Positions 17,220-23,590 of a stretch of 64,000 nucleotides of DNA are shown here, piece by piece. Position 1 is the first letter of the stretch. Every line of letters starts with the position of its first letter. Under the pieces are notes generated by a model. That model had not been told where the DNA came from. It was given only the letters and a program-made list of their open reading frames with translations, and did not search any database. Location: the NCBI GenBank assembly GCA_020891255.1, contig BQFW01000008.1, positions 2,666,001 through 2,730,000 on the forward strand, given 5' to 3'. A program made the position numbers and the translations under genes. Source of the DNA: Entomortierella parvispora E1425 (Eukaryota; Fungi; Mortierellomycota).

Positions 17220-20200
17220 ATGAGCTCCTCCAAGGACGACGCCTCGGGTAGCCCCTCCTCGCAGTCCCAATCCTTGCCCCAATCTCACCCTTCCCTCGAC
17301 CGTGTCCAGTCACCCCCGAACCAGCCTCGACGCTCTCTTTCCACCCAACTCGCTCCAGACTACCACGACTGGGTGAACGACGTCTCTTCTTCTCGCCCCA
17401 CCTCTTCTGAATCTGCCTCCAACGGCCCACCCCCTACATCCTCCACCACCACAAACCGCTTTTTGGACGCGGTCTCTGGTCGCTCCAAGGCCCAGCAAGG
17501 TCGCGCTCGCAGAGAGAATCAACCTAGTTTCTCTGGGTCAGCCTTCACCAACTCTGATCGCGAGGACAACGCGGATGATGACGATAGAGTAAATAACAAC
17601 GCTAACAACCACTCAGACCCGAGTCCAGACCAGTCCACAATGCACTCTTCAAAAGACTCCACCCAGAACTCATCACCAGCATTATCTGCCGATAAGACTT
17701 GCCCTGCACCTGCAAGCAAACTACCTGCCTTGGATCAGAGTCGCGTCGCTGTGTCTGATCCAAGTAGACCGGCCTACAAGCTGGGAGCACCCATCGTGCC
17801 CAAACCTCGTCCTCTTCAGATCCCACGCTCACCCCAGGATCTCATGGGCTCTGATCAGCCCACAGAGACCTCTGCGCTCTTGGGCAGTCAAAACAGCTTG
17901 CGGAAGCCTCAAGGGGAGGAACGAGTGCGTTGGACAAATGAAGGGTCAAGGAGAGGAACAGCCCGTTACAATGGGATTGATGATGAAACGGACGGAGCAG
18001 ACGATCTTTCCGAGGGGGATTCTTTGCGTCGGCCATCCAGGTAAGATAAAAAAAAAAAAAAATCAGGGCAGCATGGAAAGCAGGTTCAGGATCATGTTTT
18101 GACTGCATGCCTGTCAGCCAGATCGGGAGTCCAAACACACAAACTCTCTTTGTGATCACACGCGCCATCGACACAGCGAGTGGTGTTATCCTGTGTGATG
18201 GGTGGCAGGAGATGGGTTGGGATTGGGGGTCCGATTGCACGCATCTCTATGTCGCACGAGCTGCTGCTGACGCTATTGACAATTGCATGCTGTTAAAAAA
18301 AACAAAAAACACAGGGCTAGATCAATGTCACCGACTCTCGAGTCACGGCGGGGAGGCCATCAAAACAGAGGACGGGTTGCCTTTAGGAATTATGAAAACG
18401 GTGACCACGCAAACTCGAGCCGCCGTAGGAACAAGACTCTGCAAAGTTTGCGTCGATCTAGTCTTGCCAATATCAACATGGTCAAGGAAAAGTTCTTGTC
18501 TCGCAGGAGTGGGTTTTATGATGATGCCAAGGAGGCTCTTGTGAAGGAGAACAACGGAATCCGCATTTGGTACCACAACTACACAACCATTGGTAAGTCT
18601 TGGTCATCTCTTCCGTCCCTATTCCTCTCTTTTTCCAGTAGGATCTGATAGCTGGCTGCAGGGTCTGTTGGACGGGTTACTTACAATCACGTTTTTTTAA
18701 ACTCAATTTGTTCTTGTTCGGCGTCGCTGCAGACTGGATCCACGACTTTGTCAAAGAGCGAGTGCGACTAAGACATTTAAGATCGCTGGGAGGTATCCGC
18801 GGGATGCTCAGAAACAAGGCTGACGGTCTGAAGGGTTGGGTCCTCGTGCTCCTGACAGGTAAGTTTTGCTATGTTGCAAAAATGTCGAAATCTGCCAGTG
18901 ATCGGCTGCCCAAAAAGTCCAGCGGACGGTCAAATCGGGAGGGTGAAATCTTAATTGCAACCCCGGTATTCGGAAAGAACAAACAATCGCTACCATCCAT
19001 CGCATCTAACTTTTCTACGCTTGCTTTCTTTGATGGGAACCAACCATAGGAGTCATCACGGCATGCTTGGCCGCATTCATCGATGTATCGAGTTGGTGGC
19101 TGGGTGATCTGCGAATGGGTTACTGCACAACCAGCTTTTGGTGGAGTCAGTACTTTTGCTGTTGGGAATCCAGTTCTGGTAAGAAGAGTGCGACGAAACC
19201 CAGATGCTGTGCGCTGGTTAAGAAGATCCAGCAATGTGATACAAGGAGAACAGGCTGATTGACGCTGGCATTACCATCTCGCTATCTCCCTCATCATAGC
19301 TGAGCCCACCTGTCCAGAGTGGGTGTCATGGTCCCAAGCTCTGTCTTCTTCTGACGAGATATTGGGAGTTTCACGTTATACCTTTGACTGGATCGTCTAC
19401 TGTTGTTTTGGAGTAAGAAAAGTGGTTTCAGCGAACAGCTCTTTCCAACCGGGGTTATGAAGAAAACATTACTCACGGAGCAAATTGTTTACTCTCCGCC
19501 ACAATAGACAATATTCGCCTTTATTTGCGTGGTCATGGTCACATCTGACGGCACGGTGTCTCAACAAAAATCACATGGAGCAACAAAGCGCCGGAGTGGA
19601 CCCAACTACGGCGATATGCCAAACTCCAGCTCCAGGAACTCAATGGAGTCTATCTTGGTAGCATCCCAGCCCAAAAAGATTGCCTACTTTGGGGCCGGAT
19701 CCGGAATTCCAGAAGTCAAAACTATTCTTGGCGGGTTCGTTATCCGAGGATTCCTGGGATTCAGGACTTTGATGATCAAGTTGATTGGCCTGGTAAGACA
19801 TTTCGTGGTGCAAGTGAACAAAAAAAAGGTCTCCAATTAGAAGCACCTTATTAATCGTACTGGTTCTCCATTAGCCACTGATGGTCGCATCAGGATTGAA
19901 CATGGGCAAGCAAGGGCCGTTGGTGCATATTGCCTGTTGCGTGGGCAACATTGTTTGCCGTATCTTTGACAAATATAACCGCAACGATGGTAAGAGTTGG
20001 AAGATTCTCAGAGGATACTGATTATTCTCAGAGACCAAGTATGCTAACACATATCGGAACTTAGGTAAACGCAGGGAAATTCTTTCAGCAGCAGCAGCTT
20101 CCGGAGTGGCGGTGGCTTTTGGTGCGCCTATTGGCGGCGTATTGTTTTCTCTGGAGGAAGTTTCTTACTACTTCCCAAGCAAGACCATGTGGCGGACGTA

Positions 20201-22520
20201 TTTTTGTGCTTTGATTTCGGCTGTCGTTCTTAAGGTGCGCTTTCAATGGTCATGGAGTCAGGACAAGATTGACATCATATACTGACATCGTATACTGACA
20301 TGACCCAATTGTTTATCTAGATGATCAACCCTTATCGAGTGGGCAAGACTGTGCTCTTTCAAGTGACATACGACCGAGATTGGCATCTCTTCGAGTCCTT
20401 GCCATTCTTTTTTATCAGTGTCTTTGGGGTAACAATCTCGAAATGATATATTAATTTGAATCCACCCTTATTGGCCACATATAACTAATTCCTTCTCCCC
20501 ACTTGGTTTCCAGGGTGTGTATGGAGCCATTTTTTCACAGTTCCACATGTCCTACTCTCGGTTTCGATCAAGGACATGGATTGGACGACATCCGGTGCAG
20601 GAGGTACTGGCCGTCACAGTGTTAACCTGCGCCATTCAATGGATTAATCCTTGGACCCGAGTCAATTTGTTGCAGCTCCTGACAAACTTGTACAGCGAAT
20701 GTACGCCCGAAAACAATCTGCAGGGCATGTGCGCGTAGGTTTTTCAATTGGGAATGTGATCAACATTGTGCACGTTAGCATGTTGTGTGTCTCTAACGAT
20801 CGCCCATTCTCTTGTTCTTTTTTTTAATCATTTTCACAGGGTGGAGGTTGACCACATATACCCAATTTTTTTGTTATTGGCACAAGTGTTCTTGATCAAG
20901 GTCTTTTTGAACTTTTTGACTTTTGGAGTCAAGGTTCCAGGAGGCATCTTCATTCCCACCATGGTTGCCGGAGCCGTGTTTGGTCGCATGGTCGGTCTCG
21001 GCATGCAGTGGATCATTGTGTAAGTTTCTAGAATCTGTATTGTGGAATAGCTTTTGTCGAGTCAATGGGAAAGCTGATCTGATCTATAACCTGTTCTCTA
21101 CAGAAAATATCCTGATAATCAACTTTTCGAAGTCTGCGAAGGCGAGAGTATGGACTGCATCATTCCTGGACTCTACGCCCTAATTGGAGCAGCTGCATGT
21201 CTCGCAGGAGTCACTCGGATGACGGTTTCTCTTGTGGTCATTATGTTCGAACTGACTGGCGCCATGACCTACTCGCTTCCTATTATGATGGCTGTCATGA
21301 TGGGTAAATTTGTCGGCGATGCGTTTTCGCCGGATGCCTTCTTCAACAAGCTGATCGATCTGAACGAGCATCCATACTTGGACAACAAAAAGGACTACAA
21401 CACCTTTGGCACTGCGGCTGATATTGCGGACCGGTATCTGGAAACCATTGATGTCAATGCCGTTAACAACGTTGAATCCCTCAGACGAAAGGTTGAAATT
21501 TTGGCCGCCTCTGGGTATTCTGATGGCGGTTTACCAATTGTGGATCACGGCATCCTGGTGGGTTATATTGCTTCGAACGAGTTGGGACACGCACTGAATT
21601 TGGCGGAGCAGAAACATCCGGACTGTATTTGCATTTTCAGAAATCGCGCCAGCTCCAACACTCCAGCGACAGAAATCATTACTTCCCTGGATGGGTTTGG
21701 CACGAATGAGAACGGCCACAGCATTGACAGCGTTCATGGCACAGGGAATGGTGGCTACGGAATCAATGACCTTACAACATCGCCTATAGAGCAAGAGGGA
21801 CCCTACCGTCGTCGGGGAGGCGCCCCTCAACAACAGCCTTTCCGTATACCCGATTTCAGTGAAGATGTTGCACAGAGTCGGGTTAATGGGGTTGACTATG
21901 ACAATGACATGCTAGGATATGGTCGACCGATTAGGGACTCTGCTGATGTTGAATCTCGGTATGCTGGAAGTCGAGATAGCTTGAATCGCATTTTGCGATC
22001 CGATAGCAAGAAGAGTTTCAAGAGCGACAATGGAACGCTGCACCGAGGATACTCTGGGTCCATGACTGGAGACGATGGTGCCAGTGAACTTTCATACACG
22101 GATGGAACGAGGCGGTTTACTCATATTGATGCACGGGTGAGTAGCTCTGGTACGACGGATCTGCTCCGTGATCCCGCTCATACCATGGATTTCACGCCGT
22201 TTACGGATCAGGTAAAACATGACGTGTCTAGCTGGAGAAACTTGAATGTTGAAATGATGCTATTATTTCTTGAACCTAACTTTTTATCTGTGTTACTTTT
22301 TTGTTGGGATCCAAAAAAAAAGGCACCACTCTCCGTCAGCCTATTCTCGTCCATGGATCTGGTGATGGAGCTCTTTATCAAACTCGGCATCAAGTATGTC
22401 TGTGTGGTCAAAGCTGGAGAGCACTATGGCATGATCCACAAGAAGCGACTTTTGACGTTCTTGAAGGAAAATGATCAGAAACAAAAGCTCAAAGCTCGCC
22501 GACCATGGTTTTGGAAATAG
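17220..22520 (+). CDS. CLC-family chloride channel/transporter (ClC-3/Gef1-like), multi-exon, long disordered N-terminus, C-terminal CBS pair with a large insertion
   Basis: YHNYTTI|[69 protein letters not shown] and the CBS region [13 protein letters not shown] ... [12 protein letters not shown]. Confidence 0.92.
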
Positions 22521-22654: not shown

Positions 22655-23590
22655 TTACAGCTTTCCTTGTGGGGGGTTGCGAAGGACATCGATCATTGTG
22701 CTCCAGTCATGGTCTCCAGCTCCACGCTCCTTCATGATCTCCAAATGCTTGTACGCCAATTCTGCGGTGGGCAAAGTCGTGCCATTCTCCTTGGCCAAAG
22801 TGTTCATATGGCCCACATCCTTCAAACCCAAGGTGACAGGGAAGCCTCCAGCCTTGGTGGCCGAGCGATCGGCCATCTTTTGACTGTAGGTGATCCAAGA
22901 AGGGGTGGGGAAGAAGGTCTCGATGAATTTCAAGACGGCGCCCTGGTCCATGTTGGATTTCTCTGCAAAGGTCAAACCCTCGGCCAGCAACTCGATGGTG
23001 CCGACGACAAAGAAGTTGCCCATCAACTTGAACTGACTGGCCTGACCCACATCCTCGGTCTTGAGATCAATGATGCTCTTGGACATGGCGGCGAAATAAG
23101 GGCGCAATTTCTCGATCGCCTCGGCATTGCCGCTGGTCAACCAGATCAGCTGGGCAGCATGGGCGGCTGGGGGGCGACCAAAGACGGGGCACTGCAAGAA
23201 AGCATGGCGACCTCCCTGGATCTCGGACAAGGCCTGGGAGAGTTTGCGAGGGATGGTAGGGTAGACGGTGCTGGTGTCGATAAAGATCATGGGATGAGTG
23301 GCATTTTGGGCAAGAGCAAAGAGTTGACCATAGACATTCTCGACGGCGGCATCGTTGGCGAGCGAAGTGAAGATGACTTGGTTCTTGAGGAAGAGAGCCT
23401 CGAGGGAGGGTGCGACTTGGGCGCCGAGGGCCTCGATCTCGGAGGACTTGCCGGGAGAACGGTTCCAGACGGTGAGGTGACGCGATTGAGAGGCGAGGTG
23501 CTTCTGGAGGTTGTGGGCCATGCCGGAACCCATTTCGCCCAGACCGACCCAACCGATCTGGATATCACTGTGAGAAGAGGTAGAAGCCAT
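22655..23590 (-). CDS. NAD(P)-binding beta-hydroxyacid dehydrogenase family protein (3-hydroxyisobutyrate/6PGD-like), 311 aa, intronless
   Basis: Rossmann IGWVGLGEMG, VWNRSPGK, DTSTVYP, CPVFGRP, catalytic-Lys motif FKLMGN and LGLKDV. Confidence 0.88.
   Translation of the reverse strand: MASTSSHSDIQIGWVGLGEMGSGMAHNLQKHLASQSRHLTVWNRSPGKSSEIEALGAQVAPSLEALFLKNQVIFTSLANDAAVENVYGQLFALAQNATHPMIFIDTSTVYPTIPRKLSQALSEIQGGRHAFLQCPVFGRPPAAHAAQLIWLTSGNAEAIEKLRPYFAAMSKSIIDLKTEDVGQASQFKLMGNFFVVGTIELLAEGLTFAEKSNMDQGAVLKFIETFFPTPSWITYSQKMADRSATKAGGFPVTLGLKDVGHMNTLAKENGTTLPTAELAYKHLEIMKERGAGDHDWSTMIDVLRNPPQGKL

What the first reader, a model, noticed from the sequence alone, without database searches (positions are those of the whole stretch)
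19905..19919. CLC transporter with the gating glutamate replaced by glutamine (GKQGP)
Seen: GGC AAG CAA GGG CCG = GKQGP, with CAA at 19911-19913, where CLC proteins have GKEGP. GSGIPE and the inner proton-glutamate motif LFSLEE are intact. Established: this Glu (E148 of E. coli ClC-ec1) couples H+ to Cl-, and E-to-Q mimics the protonated state and abolishes H+ exchange. Inference: a natural uncoupled anion conductor in a ClC-3/Gef1-like scaffold.
Basis: partly seen in the sequence, partly recalled or inferred. Interest (0 to 1): 0.72.

Follow-up and report, generated by a model that had tools for sequence, protein, structure and literature searches.

The report
Fungal chloride transporter lacking gating glutamate
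A soil fungus carries a chloride/proton-exchanger-type gene whose key proton-coupling glutamate is naturally a glutamine; the same change causes kidney disease in human ClC-5, and related fungi have kept it for a very long time, so it probably acts as a plain chloride conductance.

Summary
Window 19905-19919 reads GGC AAG CAA GGG CCG (GKQGP) in exon 7 of a 13-exon, + strand CLC gene (17220-22520). Its exons reproduce exactly the database protein P0136, 'chloride channel 3/4/5' of Entomortierella parvispora (1283 aa, Gln597).

Gln597 aligns with the gating glutamate of ClC-3, the best sequence and fold match. Ser_cen, Tyr_cen and the inner proton glutamate are intact.

It is not an assembly error.
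- All 35 Mortierellaceae orthologs (12 genera) have GKQGP.
- The codon is CAA in five independent assemblies, while neighbouring codons differ synonymously.
- pN is 0.03-0.09 against pS of about 0.75.

Gln at this position also occurs in the same CLC subfamily in chytrids, Neocallimastigomycota and Syncephalis (68 proteins in all). Dikarya, Mucoromycotina, Glomeromycotina and others keep Glu. One or several origins cannot be decided.

The same species has a canonical GKEGP paralog (P0239).

Human ClC-5 E211Q loses H+ transport and becomes a Cl- conductance. The predicted function is therefore an uncoupled anion conductance; this is inferred, not tested.

No description of this fungal group turned up in the paper library. 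I rate it a new variant of a known kind, of moderate to high interest.

The parts
17220..22520 (+). Whole CLC gene. It has 13 exons and encodes 1283 aa identical to P0136 (Entomortierella parvispora 'chloride channel 3/4/5').
   Evidence: tblastn of P0136 gives 100% identity in the exons. A junction-by-junction check shows all introns are GT-AG and the CDS is 3852 nt. Pfam Voltage_CLC scores 259.6 bits.
17220..18040 (+). Exon 1. It encodes a long low-complexity N-terminal extension (continued into exon 2, about 330 aa in all) with short motifs conserved in Mortierellaceae.
   Evidence: It has no Pfam match. JGI gene models of orthologs leave it out.
18315..18592 (+). Exon 2, covering the end of the N-terminal extension and the start of the conserved cytoplasmic N-terminal segment.
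18733..18858 (+). Exon 3, covering the conserved pre-helix segment and the start of the first long TM helix.
   Evidence: aligned to ClC-3 residues 85 onward.
19050..19178 (+). Exon 4, covering the first long TM helix and the luminal Cys-rich loop.
19300..19412 (+). Exon 5
19508..19792 (+). Exon 6. It holds the Mortierellaceae-specific insert and the GSGIPE motif.
19541..19675 (+). Insert of about 42-45 aa (about aa 501-545) just upstream of GSGIPE. ClC-3 lacks it and it is predicted to be disordered.
   Evidence: This stretch is unaligned against ClC-3. It is conserved in frame across Mortierellaceae. pLDDT is below 50 for model residues 180-214.
19697..19714 (+). GSGIPE motif, with Ser554 as Ser_cen.
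19875..19989 (+). Exon 7, which carries GKQGP.
   Evidence: The flanking introns are 82 and 75 nt, too short to hide an alternative exon.
19905..19919 (+). GKQGP motif. Gln597 (CAA, 19911-19913) sits at the gating-glutamate position, and Lys596 is at 19908-19910.
20065..20234 (+). Exon 8. It contains FSLEE at 20145-20159; Glu654, the inner proton glutamate, is at 20157-20159.
   Evidence: The 57-residue spacing from the gate matches ClC-5 E211/E268; that numbering is from established knowledge.
20321..20428 (+). Exon 9
20514..20734 (+). Exon 10
20840..21019 (+). Exon 11, with the GIFIPT anion-site motif.
21104..22211 (+). Exon 12. It covers the last TM helices, with Tyr905 (Tyr_cen) at 21270-21272, then a CBS1-like region and a poorly conserved linker of about 170 aa.
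22323..22520 (+). Exon 13, covering a CBS2-like region and the C-terminal tail, ending in stop codon TAG.
   Evidence: Pfam CBS matches weakly (E 0.002, 18.8 bits, below the cut-off of 24).

Best explanation
This is the functional Entomortierella parvispora ortholog of an old fungal group of ClC-3/4/5-type CLC proteins. In this group the gating glutamate (E148 of ClC-ec1, E211 of ClC-5) is naturally glutamine. Shown here: the substitution is real, it is fixed across Mortierellaceae, and it is maintained under strong purifying selection. It lies in an otherwise complete anion pathway, with Ser_cen, Tyr_cen, GxFxP and the inner glutamate all present. The same change characterises the same subfamily in chytrids, Neocallimastigomycota and Syncephalis. 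Inferred: Gln cannot be deprotonated or carry protons, and it resembles the protonated, swung-out Glu. The protein should therefore pass Cl- without coupled H+ counter-transport, as a weakly rectifying, largely pH-independent anion conductance. Its likely role is as a shunt for the V-ATPase in an endomembrane compartment. The canonical GKEGP paralog of the same fungus (P0239) would provide 2Cl-/H+ exchange.
For: Sequence and gene model. Gln597 aligns with the Glu of GKEGP in ClC-3. The AF2 model (pTM 0.84) puts Gln597 at the N-terminal end of a helix, and ClC-3 is the top fold match at TM 0.81-0.82. Q is invariant in 35 Mortierellaceae proteins from 12 genera and in 68 fungal proteins in all. 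The codon is CAA in five Mortierellaceae assemblies and in Batrachochytrium, and CAG in Syncephalis, with synonymous differences in the flanking codons. Over about 600 codons pN is 0.03-0.09 against pS of about 0.75. Position 597 is the only column that cleanly separates Q-type from E-type proteins. The Lys before the gate is invariant in all 38 E-type sequences. In chytrid Q-types it varies freely (Q, V, T, A, I, M, S, K), as expected if the constraint tied to a working Glu gate is gone. One chytrid subgroup has also lost Ser_cen and Tyr_cen. A canonical GKEGP/FSLEE paralog exists in the same species. Human ClC-5 E211Q abolishes H+ transport and leaves a Cl- conductance (PMC5215204). ClC-3 E224A is described as converting the exchanger into a Cl- channel (PMC7196918 abstract).
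Against: There is no functional, localisation or expression data for any member. The inner proton glutamate is kept in 44 of 45 Q-type sequences (the other has Asp). Animal CLC channels have lost it, and gateless mutants do not need it for conductance, so protons may still matter. Mortierellaceae keep the Lys before the gate. The family-specific disordered insert next to Ser_cen, the long N-terminus and the CBS regions that score below the Pfam cut-off could mean a different regulation or role.
Confidence: 0.6

Rival explanations
1. The protein is still a proton-coupled or proton-gated transporter. Another group or bound water takes over proton transfer, or Gln597 acts together with the retained inner glutamate to give pH- or voltage-dependent gating rather than a free conductance.
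For: Glu654 and the preceding Glu653 are invariant or nearly so in all Q-type lineages. The rest of the pathway is unchanged, since only column 597 discriminates the two types.
Against: E-to-Q at this position abolishes H+ transport in ClC-5 (PMC5215204) and, from established knowledge, in ClC-ec1. No new acidic residue appears near the gate in the Q-types.
Confidence: 0.15
2. The protein has little or no transport of its own. It would act as a regulatory or scaffolding subunit, for example as a heterodimer partner of the canonical paralog, much as ClC-3 and ClC-4 heterodimerise, or as a sensor using its long disordered N-terminus and linker.
For: An E-type paralog is present in the same genome. 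There are very long low-complexity extensions and an insert beside Ser_cen. The CBS regions score below the Pfam cut-off.
Against: All pore-lining motifs are invariant under strong purifying selection, which a non-conducting scaffold would not need. The two paralogs belong to different subfamilies at about 45-50% identity.
Confidence: 0.15
3. The Gln is an artefact: a sequencing or assembly error, a pseudogene or a strain-specific mutation.
For: Only one assembly of this species is in the collections, and its reads could not be inspected.
Against: The same residue occurs in 35 orthologs from independent assemblies. The same codon CAA occurs in four other genera. The 13-exon reading frame is intact. 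dN is far below dS.
Confidence: 0.01

Closest known systems
Mammalian endosomal 2Cl-/H+ exchangers ClC-3/4/5 (solved ClC-3 structures 8jgs, 8jgv, 9dnw-9do0)
   Same: ClC-3 is the best sequence match (E 1e-149) and the best fold match (TM 0.81-0.82, 41-42% identity). Both have the GSGIPE, GxFxP, ELTG..Y and FSLEE motifs and the same helix layout with a cytoplasmic CBS region.
   Different: The gating Glu is Gln. The window protein has a disordered insert of about 42 aa before GSGIPE, an N-terminal extension of about 330 aa and a CBS1-CBS2 linker of about 170 aa. Its CBS domains fall below the Pfam cut-off.
Human ClC-5 E211Q (Dent's disease) and the engineered E211A / ClC-3 E224A 'unc' mutants
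   Same: The substitution is identical (E to Q) at the identical position in the same CLC branch. The mutants are reported to lose H+ transport and behave as Cl- conductances (PMC5215204; PMC7196918).
   Different: Those are pathogenic or artificial single mutations. Here the Gln is the wild-type state, fixed and selected in whole fungal lineages alongside a canonical paralog.
ClC-K kidney channels (gating Glu naturally Val) and other CLC channels (ClC-0/1/2)
   Same: ClC-K is another natural CLC without a gating glutamate, and CLC channels are generally viewed as 'broken' exchangers (established knowledge; PMC3514729 turned up).
   Different: They belong to a different CLC branch (about 20-25% identity). 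They also lack the inner proton glutamate, which the fungal Q-types keep.
Canonical fungal ClC-3/4/5-like paralog (subfamily I; P0239 in the same species; retrieved together with Pezizomycotina and Lipomyces sequences, so probably the Gef1 branch)
   Same: It is from the same family and organism, with about 45-50% identity in the TM core and the GSGIPE and FSLEE motifs.
   Different: It has GKEGP and a CBS domain above the Pfam cut-off. It forms a separate, well-supported clade (SH-aLRT 98-99).

Membership tests
CLC family (Pfam PF00654 Voltage_CLC) | Significant match to the Voltage_CLC profile over the TM domain. | tested here: met
   P0136 scores 259.6 bits, E 5.8e-77, over residues 550-920. 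Individual exons also match.
CLC family | CLC fold, with anion-site residues at helix N-termini. | tested here: met
   The AF2 model has pTM 0.84. Foldseek top hits are ClC-3 at TM 0.81-0.82, followed by ClC-7, -2, -6, -1, -K and ClC-ec1.
Eukaryotic CLC | Two C-terminal CBS domains. | tested here: inconclusive
   Only a weak CBS2 match was found (E 0.002, 18.8 bits against a cut-off of 24). None appears for the whole protein at E 0.01. The CBS1- and CBS2-like segments do align with those of relatives that pass the cut-off.
ClC-3/4/5 branch | Closest to ClC-3/4/5 rather than to ClC-6/7 or ClC-1/2/K. | tested here: met
   E is 1e-149 for ClC-3 against 1e-51 or weaker for all other solved CLCs. 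The fold search gives the same order.
CLC 2Cl-/H+ exchangers | Gating (external) glutamate in GK/REGP. | tested here: not met
   Gln597, codon CAA at 19911-19913, is conserved in all orthologs.
CLC 2Cl-/H+ exchangers | Inner proton glutamate. | tested here: met
   Glu654 in FSLEE lies 57 residues after the gate, as in ClC-5 E211/E268.
CLC 2Cl-/H+ exchangers | Ser_cen and Tyr_cen coordinating the central anion. | tested here: met
   Ser554 (GSGIPE) and Tyr905 (ELTGAMTY) are invariant in Mortierellaceae.
CLC 2Cl-/H+ exchangers | Measured coupled Cl-/H+ exchange. | not testable with these tools
   This needs electrophysiology or flux assays.
CLC channels (ClC-0/1/2/K type) | Membership of the channel branch, and loss of the inner proton glutamate (Val in animals). 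| tested here: not met
   Identity to ClC-1/2/K is about 20-25%, and Glu654 is retained. The protein may work like a channel, but it is not a member of that branch.

The most novel reading that the evidence does not exclude
The Q-type fungal CLCs would be true anion channels that arose from ClC-3/4/5-type exchangers independently of the animal CLC channels. They may have arisen three or more times through the same single-base change (GAA/GAG to CAA/CAG). Retention of the inner glutamate would then allow switching back. That would make E/Q at the gate an evolutionary toggle between exchanger and shunt in fungal endomembranes.
Probability: 0.3. Interest if true: 0.8.

Novelty: new variant of a known kind. 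Interest (0 to 1): 0.62.

Why it matters
The gating glutamate is the defining residue of CLC Cl-/H+ coupling. Its neutralisation is the classic laboratory way to uncouple these transporters, and in human ClC-5 it causes Dent's disease. Here nature has fixed exactly this change for a very long time. It occurs in Mortierellomycota, in most chytrids sampled (including Batrachochytrium), in rumen fungi and in Syncephalis, always beside a canonical paralog where one was looked for. This offers three things. It is a natural system for the long debate over whether endosomes need Cl-/H+ exchange or only a Cl- shunt. It may be an independent origin of channel-like CLCs. And it provides a set of wild-type proteins for studying the protonated-gate conformation without mutagenesis. 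The unexplained retention of the inner proton glutamate is a specific, testable puzzle.

Tried and rejected
Base-call confidence rests on orthologs instead.
- Alternative GKEGP exon: rejected. The flanking introns are 82 and 75 nt, and no other CLC motif occurs in the window.
- Single origin of Q: not settled. ML trees need at least 4 changes, but holding all Q sequences together is not rejected (AU p 0.283). The first two mixture-model runs on 83 sequences did not finish. I used LG+G4 on 83 sequences and LG+C20 on 39.
- Co-varying positions that might compensate for the lost Glu: none found beyond column 597.
- Expression evidence: two uninterrupted Q-type ORFs lie on short Logan and JGI contigs (L007, L008). 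They have no poly(A) tail, so they do not show transcription.
- Literature: seven full-text searches found no description of a natural Gln at the CLC gate in fungi. An absence in this library is not proof.
- Earlier notes of this scan held nothing on CLC genes.
- The large representative search was not used, as the word search answered the question.
Searches used exon references or the stored database protein P0136. Its identity to the exon set was checked junction by junction, without saving a joined sequence.

Full report
**Observation.** The window reads GGC AAG CAA GGG CCG at 19905-19919, which translates to GKQGP, with CAA at 19911-19913. GSGIPE (19697-19714) and FSLEE (20145-20159) lie in neighbouring exons. 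They are the only such motifs in the 64 kb window.

**The gene.** The surrounding region is an intron-rich eukaryotic gene on the + strand.
- A word search with the longest exon ORF (21150-22517) returned Mortierellaceae CLC proteins as the best hits.
- A second search with a profile of relatives returned P0136, 'chloride channel 3/4/5' of Entomortierella parvispora (1283 aa).
- tblastn of P0136 against the window gives 100% identity in every exon.
- A junction-by-junction check yields 13 exons with 12 GT-AG introns of 75-274 nt. The total of 3852 nt matches the protein length plus the stop. The window is therefore from this species, and P0136 is its own product.
- The exons are 17220-18040, 18315-18592, 18733-18858, 19050-19178, 19300-19412, 19508-19792, 19875-19989, 20065-20234, 20321-20428, 20514-20734, 20840-21019, 21104-22211 and 22323-22520.
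- GKQGP lies in exon 7, and the Gln is residue 597.
Searches used exon references or the stored protein P0136.

**Family and structure.**
- Pfam Voltage_CLC matches P0136 at 259.6 bits.
- Among solved structures the best matches are mouse and human ClC-3 (E 1e-149), far ahead of ClC-2, -7, -6, -1, -K, AtCLCa and CmCLC. In that alignment Gln597 pairs with the Glu of GKEGP.
- An AlphaFold2 model of residues 330-960 has pTM 0.84 and mean pLDDT 82. It places Gln597 at the N-terminal end of a helix. Its best fold matches are the ClC-3 structures, at TM 0.81-0.82.
- Ser554 (Ser_cen), Tyr905 (Tyr_cen), GIFIPT and Glu654 are all present. Glu654 is the inner proton glutamate; it lies 57 residues after the gate, as in ClC-5.
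- Three features are family-specific: an N-terminal extension of about 330 aa, a disordered insert of about 42 aa just before GSGIPE, and a poorly conserved CBS1-CBS2 linker of about 170 aa. The insert is unaligned to ClC-3, has pLDDT below 50 and is conserved in frame across Mortierellaceae.
- The CBS regions fall below the Pfam cut-off.

**Not an error.**
- All 35 Mortierellaceae proteins of this ortholog group carry GKQGP. They come from 12 genera: Gamsiella, Lobosporangium, Actinomortierella, Mortierella, Linnemannia, Podila, Dissophora, Benniella, Entomortierella, Lunasporangiospora, Haplosporangium and Gryganskiella.
- In DNA fetched from four other genera the codon is CAA. The Gly, Lys, Pro, Leu, Val and His codons around it differ synonymously, and the upstream intron position is shared.
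- Over about 600 aligned codons against the four genera, pN is 0.03-0.09 and pS about 0.75, which is saturated. The gene is under strong purifying selection.

**Wider distribution.** The same residue is Gln in Syncephalis (GRQGP) and in Neocallimastigomycota (GT/S/IQGP). It is also Gln in nearly all chytrids sampled, including Batrachochytrium dendrobatidis, where the preceding residue is V, Q, A, I, M, L or K. In all, 68 of the 147 proteins with a recognisable motif in the first two searches have Gln.

**Trees.**
- I built trees of 83 sequences under LG+G4 and of 39 sequences under LG+C20.
- Both show two well-supported fungal subfamilies.
- Subfamily I is all Glu. It includes a second Mortierellaceae gene.
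- Subfamily II holds every Q-type. Within it, a chytrid plus Neocallimastigomycota clade is all Gln except Synchytrium.
- The non-chytrid clade of subfamily II holds Paraphysoderma (E), Syncephalis (Q), Mortierellaceae (Q) and one clade of E-types. That E-type clade comprises Entomophthoromycotina, Kickxellomycotina, Dikarya, Glomeromycotina and Mucoromycotina.
- No sampled species has both an E-type and a Q-type within subfamily II.
- The trees need at least four changes of state. Forcing all Q sequences into one clade is not rejected (AU p 0.283). The number and direction of the changes remain open.

**Signs of functional shift.**
- Column 597 is the only position that cleanly separates Q-types from E-types.
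- The Lys before the gate is invariant in all 38 E-type sequences. It varies freely in chytrid Q-types, stays Lys in Mortierellaceae and is Arg in the Syncephalis pair.
- Seven chytrid sequences (Rhizoclosmatium, Obelidium, Chytriomyces and relatives) have also changed Tyr_cen to Leu, and five of them Ser_cen to Gly. Two further chytrids (Spizellomyces 'palustris', Phlyctochytrium) have Tyr_cen as Ser.
- The inner glutamate is kept in 44 of 45 Q-types; the other has Asp.

**Paralog.** E. parvispora also encodes a canonical subfamily I protein, P0239 (1029 aa). It has GSGIPE, GKEGP, FSLEE and a CBS domain above the Pfam cut-off. Chytrids with a Q-type likewise have an E-type subfamily I gene, for example Batrachochytrium, Entophlyctis and Zopfochytrium.

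**Mechanism.**
- From established knowledge, the gating glutamate shuttles protons and occludes the anion path. Neutralising it uncouples CLC exchangers.
- In the same branch, the human ClC-5 patient mutation E211Q is reported to abolish H+ transport and leave a simple Cl- conductance, like E211A (PMC5215204). ClC-3 E224A is described as converting the exchanger into a Cl- channel (PMC7196918).
- The best-supported reading is therefore a natural H+-uncoupled anion conductance, probably an endomembrane shunt, working beside a canonical exchanger paralog.
- This step is inference. No function, localisation or expression was tested.
- The retained inner glutamate is unexplained. It leaves room for proton-dependent gating or residual coupling (rival 1) or a mainly regulatory role (rival 2).

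**Novelty.**
- Seven full-text searches found no description of a natural Gln at the CLC gate in fungi.
- Natural departures from the consensus are known elsewhere. ClC-K has Val at the gate, and a trypanosome CLC lacks all consensus residues (PMC5731698). The kind of thing is therefore known.
- What is new is a large, old, selected group in the ClC-3/4/5 branch carrying the exact isosteric E-to-Q change with the rest of the exchanger machinery intact.
- I rate it a new variant of a known kind, interest about 0.6.

Noticed in passing
P0171, P0180, P0181, P0190 (Dispira, Dimargaris); P0295, P0270 (Pseudogymnoascus, Tuber): These show the opposite natural variant: the gate is intact (GKEGP) but the inner proton glutamate is Gln (FSLEQ). 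It occurs in Kickxellomycotina subfamily II and in Pezizomycotina subfamily I sequences.
   Followed up: partly
P0061, P0096, P0153, P0177, P0185, P0198, P0199; also P0178, P0192: Seven chytrid Q-types have GQQGP together with Tyr_cen changed to Leu, and five of them also have Ser_cen changed to Gly. In two further chytrids (Spizellomyces 'palustris', Phlyctochytrium) Tyr_cen is Ser. This amounts to a stepwise loss of all three anion-gate residues.
   Followed up: partly
window 19541-19675 (aa about 501-545): A Mortierellaceae-specific insert lies directly before GSGIPE. It is predicted to be disordered but has invariant stretches such as [11 protein letters not shown] and QPKK. Several NCBI gene models of orthologs (P0002, P0006) wrongly start at a Met in or just after this insert.
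   Followed up: partly
window 22470-22520 (C-terminal tail): Thirty-one of the 35 Mortierellaceae orthologs have a Cys next to the last residue (…SCF, …CC). A further one, P0006, ends in Cys itself (…RQC). The window protein ends …RRPWFWK and Gryganskiella ends …RRSWF, so the Cys is replaced by Trp in this pair. The tail might be a lipidation or sorting signal.
   Followed up: no
window 22658-23590, - strand: This is a convergent neighbour gene: a 311-aa NAD_binding_2 / NAD_binding_11 dehydrogenase of the 3-hydroxyisobutyrate dehydrogenase type. The same neighbour follows the CLC ortholog in Gryganskiella (L001), so the gene order is conserved.
   Followed up: partly
P0130, P0131, P0134, P0139 against P0136: JGI-style models of orthologs (about 800-820 aa) omit the N-terminal extension of about 330 aa and splice out the CBS1-CBS2 linker of about 170 aa. 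The window's annotation keeps that linker as coding. Which is right needs RNA data.
   Followed up: no
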